64,000 nucleotides of DNA from Ruditapes philippinarum (lineage: Eukaryota): positions 1 to 64,000 of the forward strand of contig NW_026857904.1 in assembly GCF_026571515.1 (NCBI RefSeq), in the 5' to 3' direction. The notes below the pieces were generated by a model. That model was not told the DNA's origin and did no database searches. It worked only from the letters and a program-made list of their open reading frames with translations. Positions 8,197 to 56,700 of the stretch are shown here, one piece after another. Positions within the stretch are counted from its first letter, which is position 1; each line of letters opens with the position of its first letter. Both the position numbers and the translations under genes were made by a program.

Positions 8197-8693
8197 TTTT
8201 TTTTGGGTTTTTTGGCGTCTTGTTAAGTTATAGAACATAGTTGTAGTTATTTTAGTTTGAATATGATGCATTGGAACCATTCTTAAATTATGTCATTGGA
8301 ATAAAAGTTTTCAAGTTATAAAGCTAGCTTCCTGAAGGTGTTAACTTTGTGTTTGTTTATTTTTTGAATGCCAGCTTGGGACTAGAATAATACACAGAAA
8401 AGGTATCAAGCATGATTTCTGCCATCAGAGGTGGTAAAATCATTTGTCCTTCATGCCCAGGTTGTCACACAGCCTGTACAGACAAGTGAAATTTTACCAA
8501 AAATTAAAGATATGATCAGATCATTTGGACAAGTAAGTCAAAATCAGATTTTGCCAGCTCTGCTGCAGCCATGTTTAAATTGAATTTGTCACTGTCACCT
8601 ATGTATTTAATGATATTAGGTACATTAGACGGTAAATTTTATTTATAAATCGATTTGGCTATAAATGATTACTTAACTCCTATCTATTTTCAG

Positions 8694-25359: not shown

Positions 25360-25790
25360 TATGGTGGCTGATTTGTGTCATTCGTGTTTTTGCCCCGCGA
25401 CCCCGCCAAGCGAAAAGTTAAAAGTTAACAAGTTAAAAAGGCGGGGGCGCTGAGCGAAAACACGCTAATTAGTGAGGTCTCGGCGAAGTTTTATTGCTCG
25501 GAATAAAACTTCGCCCCGCGGGGGCGCGGAGCGAGATTTAAGAAATAAAACGGCAGGGTCGCGGGACGAAAACACGCTTATAAGCGGGGGCGCTGGGCAA
25601 AGTTTAATAAATAAAACAAGTTAAAATGGCGGCGGCGCGGAGCGAAAACACGCTAAATAGCGGGGGCGCTAATTAGCGTGTTTTCGCTCCGCGACCCCGC
25701 CATTTTCTTTCTTTAATCTGCCCCGCGACCCCGTAGCGCGAAGTTTTATTTATTTGGCGGAAACACGAATGACAAAAATCAGCCACCATA
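25360..25790. mobile_element. CpG-rich TIR element of the same family with internal repeated motifs
   Basis: TATGGTGGCTGATTTGTGTCATTCGTGTTT ... AAACACGAATGACAAAAATCAGCCACCATA; internal GCGGGGGCGC and GCGAAAACACGCTAA motifs, partly in both orientations. Confidence 0.8.
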
Positions 25791-40300: not shown

Positions 40301-43300
40301 GGAAGTTATTCAGTGATTTTAGTAGCAATCAAACAATCAAAGTATTGAAGTTGTCCAAACATCAGTATATAGCCTGCTTTTAATGTACAGGTCTGTCATG
40401 ATCAACTCCAACTGCTCAACAGCTTCACCCATAATCTACTGCATTAGTGTAATTGACTAGTTCTGCTTTCAATTTGGAATAATCCATTTTTAATGTAAAG
40501 GTTTTGATAGACCAAATACAAATATAGAGCTACTATTATAGTCTGACCAGGCTCTATACTCTTAGACTAAATGTATAGAGTATGGTCAGACTGTACAGAT
40601 GTGCAGGCTGGCCTGACTCAATACTGGTTGTAAAGGGGCTGATAATTTTCGGTTCCAGGCAGGTTAAGGGTTAAACTGCATCCCCCCCCCCCCCAATCAA
40701 ATGGTCAGTACTTACCTCTACTTCCTCGGCTGTAGCAACTTCTGGATTTTTGAATAGTTCACGAGCTTCTTTGTACATCCAATTCTCAGGTATTGTGTAT
40801 TTCTGATAAAGGTTAAAAACAAAACATATTTATGTTAGAAAGAACATTCAAACTTTTATCAAAAGACTATCTTATGCAACATTATGTTAATTATTCAAAT
40901 CTTGGGCAATTAAGTTAAAAGGGGCATAACTTCAAAACTATTGATTTCAGAATTATGTCCCTTGTCTAACAACGCCCCCTTTGTTTTCACAAGCATTTCA
41001 AGTTTCATGCTAATACCTTTGAAATGTTACAATAATGGGCTACATCAAAGTTTTTGTACAGCAACTACGCTGCAGCAATCATAATAGTTCAACTTTTTCT
41101 TTGAAATGGACAAGCTGATAAGTATTTCTTAACAATATTTCTAAAATTATTTGTATTCTGCAATTATAGTAACCTTACTACTGTGCATCTGATATTTCTC
41201 AATACAGTGTAACTTCCGAATTCCGGAACTTCTGAAATCCGGAAACTTCTAAAAACCGAACAATTTTTTCGGTCCCGATTTTTTCCCTTCTATTTTCTAT
41301 TAATATAATACTTCTGAATTCCGGAACTTCTAAATTCTGAATTCCGGACGATATTTTCGTAAAATTAGAGTCAAATCAATGCAATTTTACCTCCGAAAAC
41401 CGGAAATATCCAAAGGTGTGAAATACATTGTAAATCGAGAATGTTTACCCTGCAGGAAGATTTAATCTCCCTATCGATTGTTTACTAATTAGCGGTGATC
41501 GTGTAATTTGACACGCGTTAAAATCACAAACTGTGAAATGGTATGTTTGAAGTGATGCGGTTAATCAAAGTAATTTACCGCGGTCAGTTAATTTGAAGTG
41601 TTTATTAGCGGATTAAATCACAATTAGTTGGGACAATGTATGCATCAAACGTCTATAGGGATTTTATTGCATTTGATGTAATAATTAATTAACTAGCATC
41701 GGACGATATGTAAGTTTATGCAATTATCAACATTTCTACAAACTGATAGAAATTCCAAAGCATTTTCAGGTGTAAGATAAAAATGTATTCTTTTCATTCA
41801 CATCTTTATCTTGATTAAAATACTATTATATATGATATTACAGTAATGGCCACATCTTCCTTGACATTTAGTGATATTAAGTGGTTTAGTCTTGTCCACA
41901 TTATCATAAACCTCTGAATTCCGGAAACCTCTGAAATCCGAACTTTTTGACAAGTCCCATGGGTGTTCGGTTTTCGGAAGTTACACTGTATAAAATTAAA
42001 TATAAGTTGTTTTTTTTTACCTTTAAACCTAGATCTTACATTATTTCATCGTTGGATTTATATTATTTAAATTGATCTATAACACCATATACAACAGTCT
42101 CTTACCTTCAGATCTATATTTTTCATTATTTCATCAATAGATTTATATTGTTTAATCAGATCTATAGCTCGCTTTGGTCCAATTCCACGTATAGACTCAC
42201 AGTAATCACAGCCCAGCAATATACACAGATCTATAAACTGTAATACAAACATGTTACATGTATTTCTCATCAATTTGTTTTGTTTGGTCTGAAGTCACAC
42301 AAACACAGGACATGACTGTCATGTGTAAACCTTCCAGCTTTACTGGTAGAGGAAAACCAAAGGCTCTTTGTGCGCTATTTCAGTCATAAGCAGGAAACAA
42401 CAGTAAAACCAACAACCATCTGTAAGGTAGCTTGATAACTTCTTTATATTGGTATATCTTAAAATGAGGAATATGTTTCAAATACAGGATATTTTATAGA
42501 TGACTTTCTAATTCAAAGTGTTTCATTGTTTATATATATCTGGCTTTTACTTCAATCATAAGCACATTTATTGTCATACCTTGGCAGGCAGTCCACCTTA
42601 CCAGTTTTTCTTGATAACAAACCAGTTATTACTAATTAATCAAAAATGACCATCCTAGCATTTGAAAAAAAATGTTAAAAAATCAATATGGAATAGTCCA
42701 CATTATATCTGATATTAAAACTGTATAGATGACAACTGATGATCAATATCCAAGTTTTACCTCGTCGTTAGACAATTCCAAACCCTGTAAGATTCTATCA
42801 TAGTGATACTCCTTTATTGGCATCTTCCTGGAAACAAAAAAAGAATAGATTATAAGAATCTTACACTGGATGCCAGTACAGACCGGAATATTTAGCTGAA
42901 GGGTAACTGTTTCCAGTGGTACAAGGCTCAGACGTCATTCAAAACACATGGGGGGTGTAAGACAGGTTTTTCTAGCACAGGTGTAAACAGTAGATAATCC
43001 TGTCTGATATGCAAGAAAACATCATTAATTAAATATGTTGTACAAATGAGTAGCAAATGTGACACACATTGGACTACTCTTAGGTGTTCAAGATCTACCT
43101 CCTTTATTTCATCCTTGTAAAAGCAATAACCAGTAGAAAATGATTCCTTTAACATCTTCACATGCCATAAACAAAAGAATTTGACCAGATTACGACTCAA
43201 AATTACTTTTGTGTTGACAGCAATACAGAGCCAGCTAGTAACATTTATATTTTGACTTTAAAGTTAAGTGTACTACCACTAAAATGTGAACAAGACTTTT

Positions 43301-46300
43301 CTATTTTTGACTTCTGTATATAGTTTTTCACCAGAGATGACCCATGTTCGAACTCATCCAAGCAAAACCTAGCACAAAGAAAAAGATGCTCAGTCTGCCT
43401 TTCAACATGTACTATACTATATTTTTTGAAAAACATAAAACAAGTTGAAAGTTACAACATGAATTTTAGGCGATAACTGAGCTTTTGCTAAAAATGTACA
43501 GGGAGGAACGAAGAACAATATCATTGACAGACAAAGTTCCCAGATATCCCTGTTTGTTTATTTCTCTAGGAAGACAGAATCTTAAAGAATTGCTACATCT
43601 TCAACAACCTTTCTAGTCTGGTCTTCCAATGCAAACATTCTGACAAATGTTTAAAGAATTTATCAAGGTCTTAGGAACTTAAGAAAATCATACAGGCTGT
43701 TTTTCTCAAAAATAATTTCTGCTTTTGAATTTTTTTTCCAATCTATGGTATTATCACCTTATCTGAAAAAACTTTATCGTAAAAAAAAAATTTTCATTAA
43801 AGACTAGCCTTTGAGAATTTCATTAGTTTAAATCATTTTCCAATCCAGTTCCTATACTATTAAACCAGTACAAGTGTCATAATTATGAAGCTCAAACCCT
43901 TGCTCCCTTTACTGAGAGGGAGAATCATTTATCACTAGGTGTCAATTCTCTATAAGAAAATTCAAAGTGTAGTCTTCCAATTTTATAAAGATATTACATA
44001 CTTCAAAGTAAATTAGAAGACACTTTCTTCTACCTGATGTTTTTTGTAACGTTCTCAATACAAAAGAAAGTCACTCGTTTCTTTCAGGTTAAATTGTTCT
44101 ATCTAGAAAATGCTGTCAGTGACAACAACCAGTGTTAGATTTTTTTTATATAATATTTTTACTTATCACATTAACATGTCGATTTTGTGACTCTGTAAAA
44201 ATCGTATTGCATGGCCGTGTATATATTTTGCAGTGACATCATTTAGGTTATACACCAATAGTGTGTAAAGACATGCTACATTTGTGTAAATGTTAAACAA
44301 GATGAAAAGTTACAACATGAAATGTAGCTGATAACTGAGCTAAAAATGTACAGGGAGGAACGAAGAACAATATCATTGACAGACAAAATTCCCAGATATC
44401 CCTGTTTGTTTATTTCTCTAGGAAGACAGAATCTTAAAGAATTGCTACATCTTCAACAACCTTTCTAGTCTGGTCTTCCAATGCAAAAATTCAGATAAAT
44501 GTTTACATCAAAAAATGTATTATGGAATAGTCTTAGGAACTTAAGAAAAACATACAGGCTGTTTTAAAATTTATTATGGGATAGTTTCAGGAACTTAACA
44601 AAAACATACACGCTGTTTTTCTCAACTAACCAGTACAAGTGTCATATGAGGATCAAACCCTTGCTCCCTTTACTGAGAGGCAGAAACATTTATCACTATG
44701 TGACAACTCTCTATTAGAAAATGCATGGTGTAGTCTTCAATTTTATAAAGATATTACATACTTCAAAGTAAATTAGAAGACACTTTTTTCTACCTGATGT
44801 GTTTTGTAACGTTCTCAATACAAAAGAAAGTCACTCGTTTCGCTCAGGTTAATGGGCCTATATAGAAAATGCTGTCAGTGACATAAACCAGTGTTGGATT
44901 TTTTGCTTGTATATTACATACAAGGGGCCATTGGCGCTCACCTGAAGACAGTCATTTGTGTAAGGGCCAATTTTGACACTAGCAGCAAACTTTGAACGAC
45001 TTTGGTAAAAGAATTTATAGATGATATTATACCTAAATATCAAAGCTCTAAAAAGTTGTGCTCAGGTGAGCTAAAAAGATGACTACTGTGTATACAAGTG
45101 ATGGTTATATTAATTTCTTTACCTTGCTTCACTGAATGTGAGATGTCTTAGGACAACATCAGAACCAAAAGTCAGGGAGTCCATATCCTCTGTACCTGTT
45201 GCCCACACCTTGCCAGCCTTTACCAGAGCAGCACATTGAGCTTCAGCCTCACAGGGAGCCTGCAAACAACAATCATATCACATTATTACATGTATACAAA
45301 ATCTACATACATTAGATTATATAATTCTAGGTTCATTGTGATAATCATCTCCGGATACCTACAGTTGATTAACAAGACATCTAACCGTGGGTAAAATGAA
45401 TCAATTTGCATCAATATAAAGCAACAGGTGCGTAAAATATTGACCAATAAAATTGCTTTTAATAAAATGTATGTTCTTAAATGGTGGAGGTAAAAACTAT
45501 CAGTAACAGTAATTTTTGTTTTTGCTGGATATCGTTCATATTTTTCATATTGAACTTTTCACAGCTGAATTTATTTGGTAACCGCAATTTTGTCTGTTAT
45601 TAGTAATTTTTGTTTTTGCTGGAATTTGTTCACTTTTTTAATATTGAACTTTTCACAGCTGAATTCAGTTTATTATCGCAATGTTGTATAGAACGAGCAT
45701 TTTGATTGGTTTTAATCACCTCATGAAATCAAGAGGCAACCAATGAAATAATTGCATTTGACACACCTCTAATCAACTGGACAAAAATCCCACAGCTGAT
45801 AATTGTTAATGGTTCGGCCCTGGGTATCAGACGATGTGTGATAATACAATACAATGCTTTTTATATTTCTCTCAAGACATGCTCAGTAATTTGAAGGGGC
45901 TTTACTTAGCAGTGAATAATTTGAGGCTTATCTGCCATTTTGAAATGGGGTAAACATGTTTACCAAGTATGAAGTGAATAGCTAAAACATAACTTACATC
46001 TACATAGGGGATGCCCATCAACTTGAGGAGTTCCTTACACTCTTCATTATGTTGTTTTGTTACCTTCACAAGTCTTCTGTTAAATTTCTCAATATTCTCA
46101 GCATCACCTGTTACCATTAACAATATCTTTTCATAGATGAAACATAGTAACAGCTAAACTAATCTGAACTTTAAAGACATCTTAGAGACTTTATGCAAAT
46201 ATGTAAGGAAGCATTGTGGAGAATCTTTTAAACAACAAATAATACCCTCATCTTTTCCTATAAGAATGAAGATGCTAAAGGATTTCTAAACTTTACCATA

Positions 46301-52300: not shown

Positions 52301-53501
52301 ATATCCTATCAATATTTTATGCTACAAATGACAAAAATAGCAGCCAAAATCTCACTTTAATATCAATTGACACTTTTATCATTAACACTTTTTATGTGAA
52401 GCAATTTTTATCTCTCCCAAGACCACAGTATTAAAGATATCAAGCTGTCATCATCCAAGACTGTAACGTCAATTTTCAGCCTTATTAATACTTCATTTGC
52501 AGGGTGTTTATTGTTAAGAACTGCCCTTTTCAATGCCAAAATAGAAAAATAATAAAATGCAATTTATTTTGTTAAATCTTTCATGACTTTTAAATAATCA
52601 ATGAAATGATCACTATGTAACAGGGTGAGAAAAATGTGCAGCCTGGACCCTCGAAATTTGTTTGTTTCATTTTACACCTTTTCCAAACAGTATTTCAGTC
52701 ATATAGGCGGGTAGTTTCCTAACCATCGTTCTTGGAGAGTTACACCAGTACTACACTACCTTCCGCTGTGCTAAACTACCAAAGCATCTCCAGGGGATCG
52801 AACCCACGCCAGAGAGGTAACTGGATTAGAAGTCATCGACTCTAACCCCTCGACCTCGGAGGCGGTACAACCCTCGAAATACCATACTGTGGCTGTACAG
52901 ACTGAACTATCCGGCCGCTTACACATCATCTCCCCTAAATATTTCAGTTCTGAACCTTGTTATACTCCTCTCAGTCCCCTGTTTCAATATTGATATTTGT
53001 CCTCAAATTTCACAGAGGTACAGAGCAATGTGAATAAATTTAATTAAACTCTGAGCTATAAACAGTTACGTTCCCTCAATGGGTGCCAAATGTCACAGGG
53101 CAAGAAAAATGTGCAGCGTGTCCAGAACTTGAACCAGGGACCGCCAGAATATCATCACCCGGCTCGGCTCTATTCTCTGAGCAAACCGGCTGCTTACACA
53201 TTTTTTTCTGACCTAGTGAACAGTTCTGAACCATGACAACTATATGAGAAAGGCCAGTACAACTGGCAACAAGCAGGTTCTTTGGTAAAACTTGGACCAC
53301 CTACATAAGAAGCTGTTAATTCAGGTAAACATTCATTGAATGGAAAAGGCATCTGACAACTTCATACAAAAACTATTTTTAATAACAGTTATTTTTAACT
53401 TTGGGAAAACAAACTTTACCAAAATAGTTTTTAATCTCATTTTCTTTCATACATCCGGGGGCATGGTCGGCCAGGAGTTGTGACAAGCCTTTTATTCCCA
53501 T
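37336..53501 (-). CDS. FEN1: Flap endonuclease 1, complete, 377 aa, 12 coding exons
   Basis: Exons 53501-53420, 52049-51947, 48972-48870, 46645-46582, 46107-45998, 45259-45123, 42827-42761, 42237-42106, 40802-40716, 39758-39694, 37849-37729, 37398-37336; all GT/AG and phase-consistent (1134 nt). [56 protein letters not shown] box QGRLDGFF, basic tail. AATAAA ~190 nt after the stop. Confidence 0.97.
37928..38851. mobile_element. pogo/Tigger-like MITE (TA target duplication) in FEN1 intron 10
   Basis: TA|CAGTCGAACTTCGTTCGCTCGAACTC ... GAGTTCGAGCGAACGAAGTTTAACTG|TA. Confidence 0.85.
41205..41988. mobile_element. pogo/Tigger-like MITE (TA target duplication) in FEN1 intron 8
   Basis: TA|CAGTGTAACTTCCGAA ... 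TTCGGAAGTTACACTG|TA, with subterminal CTGAATTCCGGAA repeats. Confidence 0.85.
43492..43630 (-). ncRNA. H/ACA box snoRNA A, copy 1 (FEN1 intron 6, sense to host)
   Basis: Hairpin GGAAGAC/GTCTTCC, H box AGAGAA, hairpin ACAGGGA/TCCCTGT, ACA plus 3 nt; ~139 nt; one mismatch versus copy 2. Confidence 0.8.
43965..44092 (-). ncRNA. H/ACA box snoRNA B, copy 1 (FEN1 intron 6)
   Basis: Hairpin ACCTGA/TCAGGT, H box AGAAGA, hairpin GTCTTC/GAAGAC, ACA plus 3 nt; ~128 nt; pockets 14-15 nt from the boxes. Confidence 0.75.
44344..44482 (-). ncRNA. H/ACA box snoRNA A, copy 2
   Basis: Same fold and boxes as 43492-43630; the single change turns a C-G pair into U-G in the upper stem of hairpin 2. Confidence 0.8.
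44726..44852 (-). ncRNA. H/ACA box snoRNA B, copy 2
   Basis: Same fold; H box AGAAAA and ACA box retained; about 4 substitutions and 1 indel versus copy 1. Confidence 0.75.
47432..48833 (-). mobile_element. HINE-type element with 167-bp tandem repeats in FEN1 intron 3
   Basis: TATGCCACCGC subTIR at both ends, hairpin TATGCCACCGCA...TGCGGTGGCATA, (CA/CAAA)n microsatellite, units at ~48075, 48242, 48409. Confidence 0.8.
49364..50212. mobile_element. pogo/Tigger-like MITE (TA target duplication) in FEN1 intron 2
   Basis: TA|CAGTCTAACTTG...GCGACC ... GGTCGCTTAATACAAGTTTGACTG|TA, with repeated TTAAGCGAC motifs. Confidence 0.8.
50315..51487. mobile_element. Non-autonomous TIR element (hAT-like CAGT termini)
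   Basis: CAGTCTATGCGAAAGTC / GACTTTCGCACAGACTG (16/17); CATGTA directly repeated on both flanks; subterminal GGACCG motifs. Confidence 0.7.
52658..52869 (-). mobile_element. tRNA-derived SINE with 11-bp target-site duplication
   Basis: Reverse-complement copy of 59674-59895; TSD ACCCTCGAAAT at 52647-52657 and 52870-52880; (CAAA) tail. Confidence 0.85.
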
Positions 53502-53760
53502 ATTTATCTTAGGTTTTATTTTCCAGCTGTTTCACCACTTCCCGCCAAAATAATGTACGGGACGTTACGGCTATAAAACATGACACAGAAGTTTCGAATT
53601 ATCGCATTTTTCGTTTTTTATTGATTATTATAGATTTAAATGATTAATCATTTCGCAGAAGATTTTCTAATAATGAATCTTATGACGAAACATTGCCAAA
53701 ATTAATCTTTCTACATAAAAGTGTAATTCGAATATTTTTCGTTAATGAAGAAACTGAAAC
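53502..53760. promoter_or_regulatory. Bidirectional FEN1/DDX27 promoter region with E2F site
   Basis: Start codons diverge 259 bp apart. TTCCCGCCAAA (reverse complement TTTGGCGGGAA) at 53539-53549. YY1-like AACATGGC overlaps the DDX27 ATG. Confidence 0.75.
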
Positions 53761-56700
53761 ATGGCAGCCTGCATGGAGTTAGGTCTGATTGGCACGATTT
53801 CAGAGAATGATGACATAAAGCTAGCATCAGAAAGCTCCGAAAGTGACGATGAAGCTGTAAGAATTACACATATCTCTATTTGTCATCCAATCAGCTGATA
53901 ATTTATTGTGGATAAACGTTTCTCACTTTGTTACAGGCTCGCGAAATCAGAAAATCACATGTTTACAGTTAAATCAGGTCTTGGATGGCATCCTACTTAC
54001 AGACAAATTCACAATATGCAAATTTAACGACCACCCATTTAATCTAAGATTTTTATACACCTGTCCGTAAGTGTCAAACACTGTCCTCATGAAATGTGAG
54101 CATAGCATGTATATTTTGTTTTACCCTGCCCATGTATATCCCAGTGTAACCTAAATTCGGCGATATAAGAACAAATGTCAATGGCATTTTCAATAAACGA
54201 CAGTAATCTATAATTATACTTGATATAATTTTACTACACATATTTAAAAGTAACTTTAAGTTGATTTCTAACAATGTAATTGTTCAGCGGTTGCCAAATA
54301 TAAACAAATATGGCTGATGTAAAATCCTACTACGATCTGTAAAGGTCTCCTAAATTCGGCGATTTTGATTGGTTGCAGTAAATTTTTAATTTTGGCGGGA
54401 TTGTGATGTAGTATGTTGACCAAGATTGGCAGTAAAAAAGTAAGATAAGTTAACAGACAGCGACTGTCAAATTATTTTAAGCAACAATGTTAATCAAATA
54501 GAGGAAAATATAAATAAACTTGAAATTGCATTAGGTAAAACACACAAATTTCTTCATGTCATATACAATTTTTAATGTTTACCAGCCGTATCTCCATCTT
54601 TAGCACAGAAAATCACTCTAGTTCAAAAATGATTTATACACCAAATTAAAGATAAGAATCTGTGCTTTACGATTATGTATGGTGCATAATTCGCAAATTA
54701 ATGATGTTCGTATAAAATTGGTTTAACTTTAGGGGATTATATCTTCGGTGCGGATGAAGCTAGAAATTTGCCTCAAATTCATGAATGAACCTCGTGATGT
54801 TTTTTAAATGGACTCGTCCATCTAATTAATATTCATCAAATGCAAGTCACCCGTAAAGACAAATAAACACGACAGGGGTCACGCGGAGTTTGCATGCAAC
54901 TTGTTTATTCGCCGCTGCGAGTAAAAATGGTAACACGTGGTGTTTATTGTGTCATAAAACTGATAATGATCGATATATCACAAAAAGAAAATATGCAGAT
55001 TAGGCAGAAATCTATATGCTTTTAAAATAGCCTTTGTGCAAAAAAATTTGACAACTAATGACAAAATAACAGGAAAAATGCCACTGGTAGTACCAAATTC
55101 CTGCAAATTTCCAGTTAATTGGCGTGCTTATCAGCGGCTAACTGGGGTTGCTACTAGTTGTAAAAATAGACTGTGGGACATAAACATGATTGACCTTCAC
55201 CTCTGAAATCTTGCGTGAATGATGAAAAACAAAACATCCCCAAATTTAGGAGAAAGCCGAATTTGGGTTGATGTGGTAGGATATATATATGGTCCTTGTT
55301 TATATGTATGATGAAGTCAAAGGCTTGCACGAGCTACCGCTTACCCACAATTAACTACGAATATTTATTTCAATGGAAAGAATTAAATAAAAGAAAATTA
55401 GAGGTGTAACGATTCATCAATGCATTGCTATCTGCCCTGTCCTCGATGTATGCATTGGAATAAAATTAATATGAAAGTAGGCAAAACCTATGAATGGAGA
55501 CATCATATAATATGAAAAAGGCATACTGTGAAATAGTATAAAACAAGATATGTTTGTAAAACATGTATGCCCCCTATCAGCAGCCAATTAGTCATGTGAT
55601 AAGGTTATTATGCATGACTTCTGACCCAGTGATCAAACAATTACTAAGGGTTATCAAGTATCTTCTGGTCATGACCTTAACCTTTGACCCCTTGACCCAA
55701 AACTCAATAGGGGTCATCTGCTGGTCACGACCAATCATCATACAAAGTTTGAAGTTCCTAGGCCTAAGCGTTTTTAGTTTATTGATCAGAAACCGTTTTA
55801 ACATACAAGGTCAATGTGACCTTGACCTTTGACCCCTTGACCCCAAAATCAATAGGTCATCTGCTGGTCATGACCAATCACCAAACCATGTTTGAAGTTC
55901 CTAGGCCAAAGGGTTCTTAAGTTATTGATTTGAAAGCATTTTTACCTACAAGGTCAATGTGACCTTGCCCTTTGACCCCTTAACCCCAATATCAATAGGG
56001 GTCATCTACTGGTCATGACCAATCACCATACCAAGTTTTGAAGTTCCTAGGCCTAAGGGTTCTTTAGTTATTGATCGGAAACCATTTTTACCTAAGAGGT
56101 AAATGTGACCTTGACCTTTGACCCCTTGACCCCAAAATCAATAGGGGTCATCTACTGATCATGACCAATCACCATATCAAGTTTGAAGTCCCTAGGCCTA
56201 AGGGTTCTTTCGTTATTGATTGGAAACCGTTTTTACCTACAAAGTCAATGTGACCTTGACCTTTGACCCCTTAACCCCAAAATCAATAGGGGTCATTTGC
56301 TGGTCATGAACAATCACCATACCAAGTTTGAAGTTCCTAGGCCTAAGGGTTCTTTTGTTATTGATCAGAAACCGTTTTTACCCAAGAGGTCAATGTGACC
56401 TTGACCTTTGACTCCTTGACCCGAAAATCAATAGGGGTCATCTACTGATCATGACCAATCACCATACCAAGTTTGAAGTTCCTAGGCCTTAAAGTTCTTT
56501 AGTTATTGATCAGAAATCGTTATTGCTTACAAGGTCAATGTGACCTTGACCTTTGACCCCTTGACCCCAAAATCAATAGGGGTCATCTACTAATCATGAC
56601 CAATCACCATACCAAGTTTGAAGTTCCTAGGCCTTAAGGTTCTTTAGTTATTGATTGGAAACCGTTTTTGCTTACAAGGTCAATGTGACCTTGATCTTTG

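What the first reader, a model, noticed from the sequence alone, without database searches (positions are those of the whole stretch)
43438..44905. Duplicated pair of H/ACA snoRNAs (four copies) in a single FEN1 intron
Seen: within a tandem duplication in intron 6, two blocks are much better conserved than their spacers. On the FEN1 sense strand each folds as hairpin-H box (ANANNA)-hairpin-ACA+3 nt, 128-139 nt long; the one change in snoRNA A preserves pairing. Known: intronic snoRNAs usually sit in ribosome/translation genes, one per intron in vertebrates, while several per intron implies polycistronic processing. Inference: a DNA-replication gene serves as snoRNA host, so E2F-driven S-phase transcription would co-produce rRNA-modifying guides, with the rRNA helicase DDX27 firing from the same promoter.
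Basis: partly seen in the sequence, partly recalled or inferred. Interest (0 to 1): 0.78.

Follow-up and report, generated by a model that had tools for sequence, protein, structure and literature searches.

The report
Clam intronic H/ACA guide RNA cassette
One intron of a clam's FEN1 gene carries two tandem copies of a cassette with two likely pseudouridine-guide RNA genes, one of which looks like the guide for a conserved site in spliceosomal U6 RNA, an ordinary kind of gene not yet described in molluscs.

Summary
Intron 6 of FEN1 (minus strand, 42827-45121; the splice is seen in RNA contigs) contains a tandem duplication. Two blocks, A (139 nt) and B (about 125 nt), are far better conserved than their spacers. 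Each has hairpin, H box, hairpin and ACA on the host-sense strand.

- Block A is not an rRNA guide. Its best Rfam matches, both below threshold, are SCARNA3/HBI-100 and Drosophila PsiU6-40. Its 3' pocket pairs 7+4 Watson-Crick with the clam's own U6 and places U40 in the pocket.
- Block B is an H/ACA-like orphan with no Rfam relative. No target was found, but 28S rRNA is almost missing from the assembly.
- FEN1 is not the only host. The same A+B cassette forms a ~13.6-kb array (7 full A, 9 B) in what appears to be an intron of a ZER1/ZYG11-like gene on another contig, also sense-oriented.
- Several H/ACA genes per intron is a published arrangement in Drosophila. Other unchecked notes of this scan report intronic snoRNA arrays elsewhere in this genome.

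Expression evidence is suggestive only, and there is no cross-species comparison and no compensatory covariation. Verdict: likely real, a new member of a known kind, of modest interest.

The parts
43492..43630 (-). H/ACA RNA gene A, copy 1. H box AGAGAA at 43562-43567, ACA at 43495-43497. The 3' pocket strands UAUCUG and UCGUUCC are complementary to U6 around U40.
   Evidence: An RNA-run contig of 141 nt equals 43489-43629 exactly.
44344..44482 (-). H/ACA RNA gene A, copy 2. It has one difference from copy 1, C to U, which keeps the pair as U-G.
43965..44089 (-). H/ACA-like RNA gene B, copy 1. H box AGAAGA at 44026-44031, ACA at 43968-43970. Target unknown.
44726..44849 (-). H/ACA-like RNA gene B, copy 2. 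H box AGAAAA at 44786-44791, ACA at 44729-44731.
42827..45121 (-). FEN1 intron 6, 2295 nt, GT..AG on the minus strand. It hosts all four copies.
   Evidence: The joint 42826|45122 is seen in spliced contigs of runs X1 and X5.
45122..45259 (-). FEN1 coding exon 6 (XPG_I domain).
   Evidence: Pfam XPG_I, E 6.5e-19. Contig pieces.
42761..42826 (-). FEN1 coding exon 7 (22 codons, [22 protein letters not shown]).
43272..44931 (.). The stretch homologous to the cassette array on contig C11138: two cassette units. This is the only part of window 30000-60000 that matches that locus.
43275..43377 (.). Fragment of a dispersed high-copy repeat lying downstream of A1 inside the cassette. It is also present in four array units.
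   Evidence: 483 first-look candidates on many contigs. High depth with loose ends in RNA reads.
44095..44145 (-). Moderately conserved block just upstream of B (mean difference 0.14). A second copy lies at about 44855-44904. Role unknown.
   Evidence: (D7).

Best explanation
Intron 6 of the clam FEN1 gene carries two tandem units of a ~0.8-kb cassette. Each unit encodes two box H/ACA guide RNAs on the host-sense strand.

RNA A (139 nt) is the clam counterpart of the U6-psi40 guides (vertebrate SCARNA3/HBI-100, Drosophila pugU6-40). The two strands of its 3' pocket pair with U6 positions 33-39 and 42-45. This leaves U40 and A41 unpaired, 14 nt upstream of the ACA box, so the dyskerin-type synthase would convert U40. 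RNA B (about 125 nt) has the same architecture but no recognisable target or relative.

The RNAs are most likely released from the spliced intron by cleavage in the spacers and exonucleolytic trimming up to the bound H/ACA proteins. The same cassette is amplified to a ~13.6-kb array in what appears to be an intron of a ZER1/ZYG11-like gene. The FEN1 copies are therefore a two-unit offshoot or sister of that array, moved as DNA and then duplicated in place.

Shown: anatomy, conservation pattern, complementarity to U6, intron position and orientation, and the second locus. Inferred: RNA accumulation, processing route, actual pseudouridylation, and the direction of transfer.
For: - Rfam. A's two best matches are both U6-psi40 guide families and both align over their full length: SCARNA3 at 23.4 and 22.8 bits, PsiU6-40 at 20.5 and 18.7 bits.
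- Literature. HBI-100, ACA12 and Drosophila pugU6-40 guide U6 psi40, and pugU6-40 was shown to do so in a yeast assay (passages of PMC3884663).
- Target match. The clam U6 was taken from its own genome. Among U1, U2, U4, U5, U6 and the rRNA pieces available, the only all-Watson-Crick match of 11 bp to A's 3' pocket is U6 U40, at 7+4 bp. 5 of 20000 composition-preserving shuffles of the pocket strands reach 11 bp in any of the five snRNAs.
- Guide and box conservation. The 3' guide strand, columns 120-126, is invariant in 9 of 9 copies. The 5' guide strand and ACA are intact in 8 of 9, and the H box in 9 of 9. For B, ACA is intact in 11 of 11 and ANANNA in 10 of 11.
- Conservation troughs match the RNA bounds.
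- Variable columns favour unpaired positions. A: 6 of 76 paired against 13 of 62 unpaired, p 0.045. B: 5 of 64 against 17 of 61, p 0.004. The changes inside helices include G-U to A-U, C-G to U-G and G-C to G-U.
- Pocket geometry. In all four hairpins the 3' strand of the internal loop starts 14-16 nt before its box (my count on the columns).
- Folding is strand-specific.
- Orientation. Both loci carry the cassette in the sense orientation of a protein-coding gene, in an intron or apparent intron.
- Expression. In run X5, which holds spliced FEN1 mRNA, a 141-nt contig equals A1 exactly at depth 12.5. The mRNA contig is at 19.2, and the spacer bin just upstream of A1 on the RNA strand (43675-43759) is at about 1; the other neighbouring bin overlaps A1.
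Against: - Neither A nor B reaches any Rfam gathering score. E-values of 0.13-0.38 hold only for a 2.4-kb search.
- There is no compensatory double change in any of the 70 pairs examined. The copies are too alike, so structure is not proven by covariation.
- One lower-stem pair of A's 5' hairpin (columns 10 and 56) is C-A in 5 of 9 copies, and both strands of A's 5' pocket vary between copies.
- The 5' side of the U6 duplex is only 4 bp, followed by a mismatch. The pocket also requires two G-U pairs of the minimum-energy fold to open.
- No UGAG (CAB box) occurs anywhere in A (sequence).
- B's architecture is not unusual for this window: it ranks 7 and 10 of 69, and 15 candidates fold at or below -24 kcal/mol.
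- Expression is not demonstrated. Two raw-read RNA runs gave about 4 reads on A and none on B. Three of the four carry variants not in the window copy; by my comparison they fit the array copy that has lost its ACA box. In X5, a contig through the spacer has a depth like A's. In X1, A is no deeper than the rest of the intron. The ends of the 141-nt contig also coincide with points where the copies diverge, which alone could break an assembly graph.
- No sequence from another species could be compared.
Confidence: 0.7

Rival explanations
1. The FEN1-intron copies are recent, functionless duplicates of the ZER1-like-intron array. Only the array makes the working RNAs. The copies look conserved because they are young or are homogenised by gene conversion.
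For: - The array is larger: 7 full A and 9 B, against 2 and 2.
- Homology to the array ends sharply inside the intron at 43272 and 44931, as for an inserted DNA piece.
- RNA contigs with one-unit joints (43683|44600 and 43653|44519) suggest that copy number varies.
Against: - Between the two FEN1 units the spacers have diverged to 74-87% with large indels. A differs at 1 of 138 positions, and B at 5 of 122 positions before its last three. That uneven pattern within this locus fits selection on the RNAs.
- All boxes and the U6 guide strands are intact in both copies.
- The exact-match 141-nt RNA-run contig carries the copy-1 sequence of the window.
Confidence: 0.12
2. The cassettes are independent transcription units with their own promoter, for example the moderately conserved block upstream of B. 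They yield a B-A precursor, and lying in introns is incidental.
For: - A block of about 50 nt upstream of B is better conserved than the other spacers (0.14 against 0.22-0.37).
- Tandem arrays of independently transcribed or polycistronic snoRNAs are known in plants, yeast and trypanosomes (recalled, not from a call).
Against: - At both loci all units lie in the sense orientation of a protein-coding host.
- No snRNA-type or other promoter element was identified, and none was searched for with a suitable tool.
- The two raw-read RNA runs show no transcript covering the units.
Confidence: 0.12
3. The blocks are not RNA genes. They are unevenly conserved parts of a low-copy tandem repeat, and the H/ACA-like features and the U6 match are chance.
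For: - No Rfam gathering hit and no covariation.
- H/ACA-like architecture is found 69 times in this window. One good-looking case (52885-53031) is a high-copy repeat.
- The cassette contains a dispersed-repeat fragment.
Against: - Two separate blocks each show boxes at the right places, conservation that ends 3 nt after ACA, and folding on one strand only.
- A ranks first of 69 candidates.
- The pocket match to U6 U40 is reached by 5 of 20000 shuffles, and it agrees with the identity of the two best Rfam families.
Confidence: 0.06

Closest known systems
SCARNA3 / HBI-100 (Rfam RF00565), the vertebrate H/ACA guide for U6 psi40
   Same: - Two-hairpin H/ACA RNA of about 140 nt, with a full-length alignment to the model.
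- The 3' hairpin carries the strand ending UCGUUCC plus an UCUG-containing 5' strand, which pair around U6 U40.
- The chicken sequence printed in PMC2770669 (Table 2) shares, by eye, the GGAAG start, the CUUCCUAGAG lower stem and H-box region, and the UCGUUCC guide.
   Different: - It scores 23.4 bits against a gathering score of 47.
- The 5' strand pairs 4 bp rather than 6.
- There is no UGAG CAB motif.
- It is multi-copy and sits in introns of FEN1 and a ZER1-like gene.
Drosophila pugU6-40 / PsiU6-40 (Rfam RF02669)
   Same: An invertebrate H/ACA RNA shown to direct U6 psi40 in a yeast assay (PMC3884663). It is the second-best family for block A, matched over the full length.
   Different: It scores 20.5 bits against a gathering score of 48. 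The fly RNA is a WDR79-bound Cajal-body RNA. Localisation of the clam RNA is unknown and no CAB motif was seen.
[quoted passage not shown] 2004, J Mol Biol)
   Same: Several H/ACA genes, often duplicated isoforms, inside a single intron of a protein-coding host.
   Different: I saw only the title in the reference list of PMC5932544, not the paper. The clam cassette alternates two different RNAs, reaches 7-9 units at the second locus, and occurs in two unrelated hosts.
Other intronic snoRNA arrays noted in this clam genome by the scan (RPL13A intron, another 'intron 6' cluster)
   Same: Tandem snoRNA genes in one intron of the same genome.
   Different: These are unchecked first-reader notes. 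They concern box C/D families and translation-related hosts.

Membership tests
Box H/ACA guide RNA | Hairpin-hinge-hairpin-tail fold with an H box (ANANNA) in the hinge | tested here: met
   - A: AGAGAA in 9 of 9 copies.
- B: AGAAGA, AGAAAA or AGAATA in 10 of 11 copies, and UGAAGA in 1.
- Both hairpins are predicted on the minus strand only.
Box H/ACA guide RNA | ACA box 3 nt from the mature 3' end | tested here: inconclusive
   ACA is present in 8 of 9 A copies and 11 of 11 B copies, and conservation drops about 3 nt after it. The mature 3' end was not mapped. The X5 contig ends 3 nt beyond the predicted end.
Box H/ACA guide RNA | Internal-loop pocket whose top lies 14-16 nt upstream of the H or ACA box and is bipartitely complementary to a target around an unpaired U-N | tested here: met
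   - Geometry: 16, 14, 14 and 15 nt for the four hairpins (my count on the columns).
- Complementarity is met for A's 3' pocket, with U6 U40 at 7+4 Watson-Crick pairs.
- No convincing target was found for A's 5' pocket or for B's two pockets.
Box H/ACA guide RNA | Accumulates as a stable RNA bound by dyskerin, Nop10, Nhp2 and Gar1 | not testable with these tools
   There are only suggestive contigs in one RNA run, and almost no reads in two cDNA runs.
SCARNA3 (RF00565) / PsiU6-40 (RF02669) | Score at or above the Rfam gathering threshold | tested here: not met
   23.4 bits against 47, and 20.5 bits against 48.
SCARNA3 (RF00565) / PsiU6-40 (RF02669) | Antisense elements that place U6 U40 in the pocket | tested here: met
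   UCGUUCC pairs with U6 33-39 and CUG plus U with 42-45. The clam U6 sequence comes from its own genome.
H/ACA scaRNA (Cajal-body class) | CAB box (UGAG) in the terminal loops | tested here: not met
   There is no TGAG anywhere in the 138-nt A sequence. The loops read GAAGAUGU and UGUCAAU. The UGAG consensus is recalled, not taken from a call.
Intron-encoded snoRNA | Lies within an intron, in the sense orientation of the host, and depends on host transcription and splicing | tested here: inconclusive
   Position and orientation are met for FEN1 (splice joint), and inferred for the ZER1-like host from the flanking Pfam-positive exons. Dependence on splicing was not tested.

The most novel reading that the evidence does not exclude
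The A+B unit is a self-amplifying two-guide cassette that has moved as DNA between introns of two cell-cycle-linked genes (FEN1 and a ZER1/ZYG11-like gene) and varies in copy number between individuals. The supply of the U6-psi40 guide, and of an orphan guide B with a target not known from other animals, would then be tied to proliferation-dependent host transcription.
Probability: 0.1. Interest if true: 0.55.

Novelty: new member of a known kind. Interest (0 to 1): 0.3.

Why it matters
If confirmed, A would extend the U6-psi40 guide family from vertebrates and flies to molluscs. It would also be a case that Rfam-threshold annotation misses.

The cassette also illustrates how guide RNA genes multiply and change hosts. 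There is an array in one gene's intron and a two-unit offshoot in another, and the FEN1 copies still look constrained.

It does not support a special link between DNA replication and rRNA modification. For genome annotation of bivalves, it is a reminder that satellite-like intronic arrays can be snoRNA genes.

Tried and rejected
- Rfam at gathering thresholds over the whole window gave nothing.
- Rfam on B alone gave as its best snoRNA hit plant snoR74, at 20.6 bits against a gathering score of 44. The guide strands are not shared, so I rejected it as a relative.
- Covariation gave no double changes, so it is uninformative.
- Target search for B and for A's 5' pocket. It covered U1, U2, U4, U5, U6, three 18S pieces, a second SSU-like sequence of doubtful origin (C7645) and two LSU pieces. 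Only G-U-rich or AU-rich matches came up, mostly in the doubtful SSU. None is credible.
- Attempts to obtain 28S rRNA failed. The LSU model found only fragments (model positions 967-1170 and 2414-2822). The best 5.8S match, the only one whose downstream side was fetched, has no LSU after it. An rRNA target for B therefore cannot be excluded.
- Cross-species search. One exact 18-mer scan of metagenome contigs gave 9 loci, and all match only 18-19 nt, so they are chance. No eukaryote genome collection was available.
- A haplotig explanation for C11138 is rejected. Nothing but the cassette matches between window 30000-60000 and C11138:258001-298000, and the flanking exons there are ZER1-like, not FEN1.
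- A further H/ACA-looking candidate in FEN1 intron 1 (52885-53031) is rejected. It is a high-copy repeat with no H/ACA family match.
- The strict E2F motif TTTSSCGC has 4 matches in the window, none near FEN1, and 20 of 100 shuffles do as well.
- The FEN1 exons were scanned one by one.
- I did not open any supplementary files. The supplements of PMC3884663 and PMC2770669 may hold guide-target drawings and host-gene tables that bear on the comparison with SCARNA3.
- Literature searches for snoRNAs in bivalves ('snorna' + 'bivalve' + 'pseudouridylation') returned 2 irrelevant papers. 'psiu6-40' returned none. I make no wider claim of absence from print.
Full report
**Observation**

The region holds a tandem duplication. 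The repeat finder pairs 43487-43653 with 44339-44505 (167 nt, 98%) and 43978-44092 with 44738-44852 (115 nt, 97%). The pieces between pair at 74-87%, and a pairwise alignment shows large indels in the spacers.

On the minus strand the first block (A: 43492-43630 and 44344-44482) reads hairpin, AGAGAA, hairpin, ACA plus 3 nt. The second block (B: 43965-44089 and 44726-44849) reads hairpin, AGAAGA or AGAAAA, hairpin, ACA plus 3 nt.

**Gene context**

FEN1 lies on the minus strand. I read its exons one by one and did not join them.
- Exon 6 (45122-45259) matches Pfam XPG_I at E 6.5e-19.
- A 22-codon exon 7 lies at 42761-42826.
- The next exon, at about 42070-42240, has helix-hairpin-helix matches.
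- Spliced contigs in two public runs of the same species join 42826 to 45122, with GT..AG on the minus strand.

Intron 6 is thus 42827-45121 (2295 nt) and contains all four copies in the sense orientation.

**A second locus**

Searching the window's own 1.4-Gb assembly with A gives 10 matches: 2 in the window and 8 on contig C11138, of which 7 are full length at 95-99% and 1 is a 61-nt fragment. Searching with B plus its flanks gives 2 matches in the window, 10 on C11138 and one 45-nt match elsewhere.

On C11138 the units form a minus-strand array from about 269.4 to 283.0 kb, with 7 full A and 9 B. Between window 30000-60000 and C11138:258001-298000, only 43272-44931 is homologous, so this is not a haplotig of the FEN1 locus. 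The open frames flanking the array on the same strand match Pfam LRR_Zer-1 (E 8.6e-10) upstream and ZER1-like_2nd (E 1.8e-10, 3.8e-16, 1.1e-6) downstream. That the array lies in an intron of a ZER1/ZYG11-like gene is inferred from these exons, not from RNA.

The blocks are not dispersed repeats. As a control, the same tool returned 483 and 1209 first-look candidates for two true repeats of the window.

**Constraint**

Over 9 aligned units the mean pairwise difference is as follows:

| Region | Mean pairwise difference |
|---|---|
| A | 0.039 |
| B | 0.064 |
| Block upstream of B | 0.14 |
| Downstream of A | 0.22 |
| Between B and A | 0.29-0.37 |

The troughs begin and end at the predicted RNA ends.

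Boxes and guide strands across the copies:
- A: the H box is intact in 9 of 9 copies and the 3' guide strand in 9 of 9. ACA and the 5' guide strand are intact in 8 of 9. The exception, at C11138:274318-274454, has TCA and several other changes, and looks like a decayed copy.
- B: ACA is intact in 11 of 11 copies and ANANNA in 10 of 11.

No helix pair shows a change on both sides (0 of 38 pairs in A, 0 of 32 in B), so there is no covariation proof. Variable columns are fewer among paired than unpaired positions. For A it is 6 of 76 against 13 of 62 (p 0.045). For B it is 5 of 64 against 17 of 61 (p 0.004).

Evidence against the structure should also be noted. In A's 5' hairpin the pair of columns 10 and 56 is C-A in 5 of 9 copies, and both strands of that pocket vary, so the 5' pocket may not be a working guide.

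Folding is better than dinucleotide shuffles on the minus strand (z -2.3 to -3.4) and not on the plus strand (z -1.0 to +0.3).

A simple scan of the whole window for H/ACA architecture gave 69 candidates. A1 and A2 rank first and second, and B1 and B2 rank 7th and 10th. B's case therefore rests on architecture together with the conservation pattern, not on architecture alone.

**What A is**

Nothing in the window reaches an Rfam gathering score. With the region alone, the two best families for A are SCARNA3 (23.4 and 22.8 bits, E 0.13 and 0.17, gathering score 47) and Drosophila PsiU6-40 (20.5 and 18.7 bits, E 0.38 and 1.1, gathering score 48). Both match over the full model.

Passages of Deryusheva and Gall 2013 (PMC3884663) state that Drosophila pugU6-40 directs pseudouridylation of U6 position 40 in a yeast assay. 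They also state that human HBI-100 and ACA12 are guides for the same site. HBI-100 is SCARNA3 according to a passage of PMC6466398.

I took the clam U6 from its own genome (118 bits). A's 3' pocket pairs with it as follows:
- UCGUUCC pairs with U6 33-39.
- The 5' strand pairs with U6 42-45.
- U40 and A41 are left free, 14 nt before ACA.

This is the only all-Watson-Crick match of 11 bp among the five snRNAs and the rRNA pieces tested. It is reached by 5 of 20000 shuffles of the pocket strands.

Three weaknesses remain. The 5' side has only 4 pairs before a mismatch. Two G-U pairs of the minimum-energy fold must open for the pocket to form. No UGAG motif is present in A, so I cannot say whether it is a Cajal-body or a nucleolar RNA. 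I therefore file A as working like a U6-psi40 guide and probably homologous to SCARNA3/pugU6-40, but it fails the formal Rfam membership score.

**What B is**

B has no Rfam relative. The best snoRNA hit is plant snoR74 at 20.6 bits, without shared guide strands. No credible target was found among the RNAs I could collect. The assembly lacks nearly all of 28S rRNA, so an rRNA target remains possible. B's pockets are AU-rich.

**Expression**

The look-up of sequencing runs listed no holder on record as RNA, plus four raw-read RNA runs of the species. I laid two raw-read runs and two contig runs on 42740-45270.

- The raw-read cDNA runs gave about 4 reads on A1 and none on B, with FEN1 exons at about 1-2x. 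Three of the four reads carry variants not in the window copy. By my comparison with the alignment, they fit the decayed array copy.
- In X5, which contains spliced FEN1 mRNA (depth 19.2), a 141-nt contig equals 43489-43629 without any difference, at depth 12.5. The spacer bin just upstream of A1 on the RNA strand (43675-43759) is at about 1; the other neighbouring bin overlaps A1 and holds part of the same contig.
- Also in X5, a 237-nt contig of depth 9.2 runs through the spacer. The ends of the 141-nt contig coincide with points where the copies diverge, which could break the assembly graph by itself.
- In X1, A is no deeper than the rest of the intron.

This is suggestive and no more.

**Mechanism and history**

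The most likely mechanism is release from the spliced host intron. With four genes in one intron, the inner ones need cuts in the spacers before trimming. This step is inferred.

The FEN1 copies share states that differ from all array copies (B columns 28-29 and 39). This suggests that one unit was copied between the loci and then duplicated in place. The direction of transfer is unknown.

Contigs with joints at 43683|44600 (X5, 0 and 2 other letters on its two pieces) and 43653|44519 (X1) fit one-unit forms. The first joint falls at matching positions of the 54-nt repeat found. Copy number may therefore vary between individuals.

- Calling the RNAs rRNA guides is not supported for A and is open for B.
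- FEN1 is one of two hosts.
- Several H/ACA genes per intron is a published Drosophila arrangement. I saw only the title of Huang et al. 2004 in a reference list.
- This scan holds unchecked notes of other intronic snoRNA arrays in the same genome.
- S-phase coupling is untested. There is an E2F-like TTTTGGCGGGAA on the FEN1 strand near 53540-53551, and no exact TTTSSCGC there.
- A divergent coding exon starts about 260 nt from the FEN1 ATG. Its likeness to DDX27 rests on my recollection of the human protein and on no call.

**Verdict**

These are likely genuine H/ACA guide RNA genes: about 0.8 for A and 0.65 for B. A is a probable U6-psi40 guide. They are new members of a known kind, and interest is modest.

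Noticed in passing
own genome, contig C11138:269400-283000 (loci L018, L019): A minus-strand array of about 13.6 kb of the same A+B cassette (7 full A, 1 truncated A, 9 B). It includes a decayed A copy (TCA for ACA) and a gap of about 3 kb between units. It lies between ZER1/ZYG11-like exons.
   Followed up: yes
window 43275-43377 and 42910-43079: Two stretches of intron 6 with very high depth in RNA reads and many loose ends. The first is a dispersed repeat (483 first-look candidates in the genome) that is also part of four array units.
   Followed up: partly
window 52870-53045 (FEN1 intron 1, minus strand): It passes a crude H/ACA-architecture filter (-31.8 kcal/mol) but is a high-copy repeat. 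It often occurs in tandem with a period of about 250 nt elsewhere (1209 first-look candidates). No H/ACA family match.
   Followed up: yes
window 43683|44600 and 43653|44519: RNA-run contigs join these places and skip one cassette unit. The first joint falls at matching positions of a 54-nt repeat (43650-43703, 44512-44565, 44566-44619). This may be a one-unit allele or an unequal crossover product.
   Followed up: partly
window 44095-44145 and 43901-43920: A block of about 50 nt upstream of B and a small hairpin (CUCCCUCUCAGUAAAGGGAG) downstream of B are better conserved than the other spacers (0.14 and 0.10). No role is assigned.
   Followed up: no
own genome, contig C8989:1097300-1102700: U6 genes (minus strand) and U5 genes (plus strand) alternate with a period of about 1.3 kb. 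This is a tandem U5-U6 gene array.
   Followed up: no
own genome (C8048, C7645, C13473, C5783, C8036): The rDNA is barely assembled. There are scattered 18S pieces, one complete but low-scoring SSU-like sequence not followed by 5.8S or LSU, two short LSU fragments, and 5.8S copies, the better of which has no LSU after it.
   Followed up: partly
window 53502-53800: The FEN1 ATG (53501, minus) and the first coding exon of a divergent plus-strand gene (ATG near 53761) are about 260 nt apart. An E2F-like TTTTGGCGGGAA lies on the FEN1 strand at about 53540-53551.
   Followed up: partly
window 45508-45687: A direct repeat of 86 nt (85% identical, spacing 94) in FEN1 intron 5.
   Followed up: no
window 25449-25577 (+) and 8323-8472 (+): Other high-ranking hits of the crude H/ACA-architecture scan (-34.8 and -31.2 kcal/mol). 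Not examined further.
   Followed up: no
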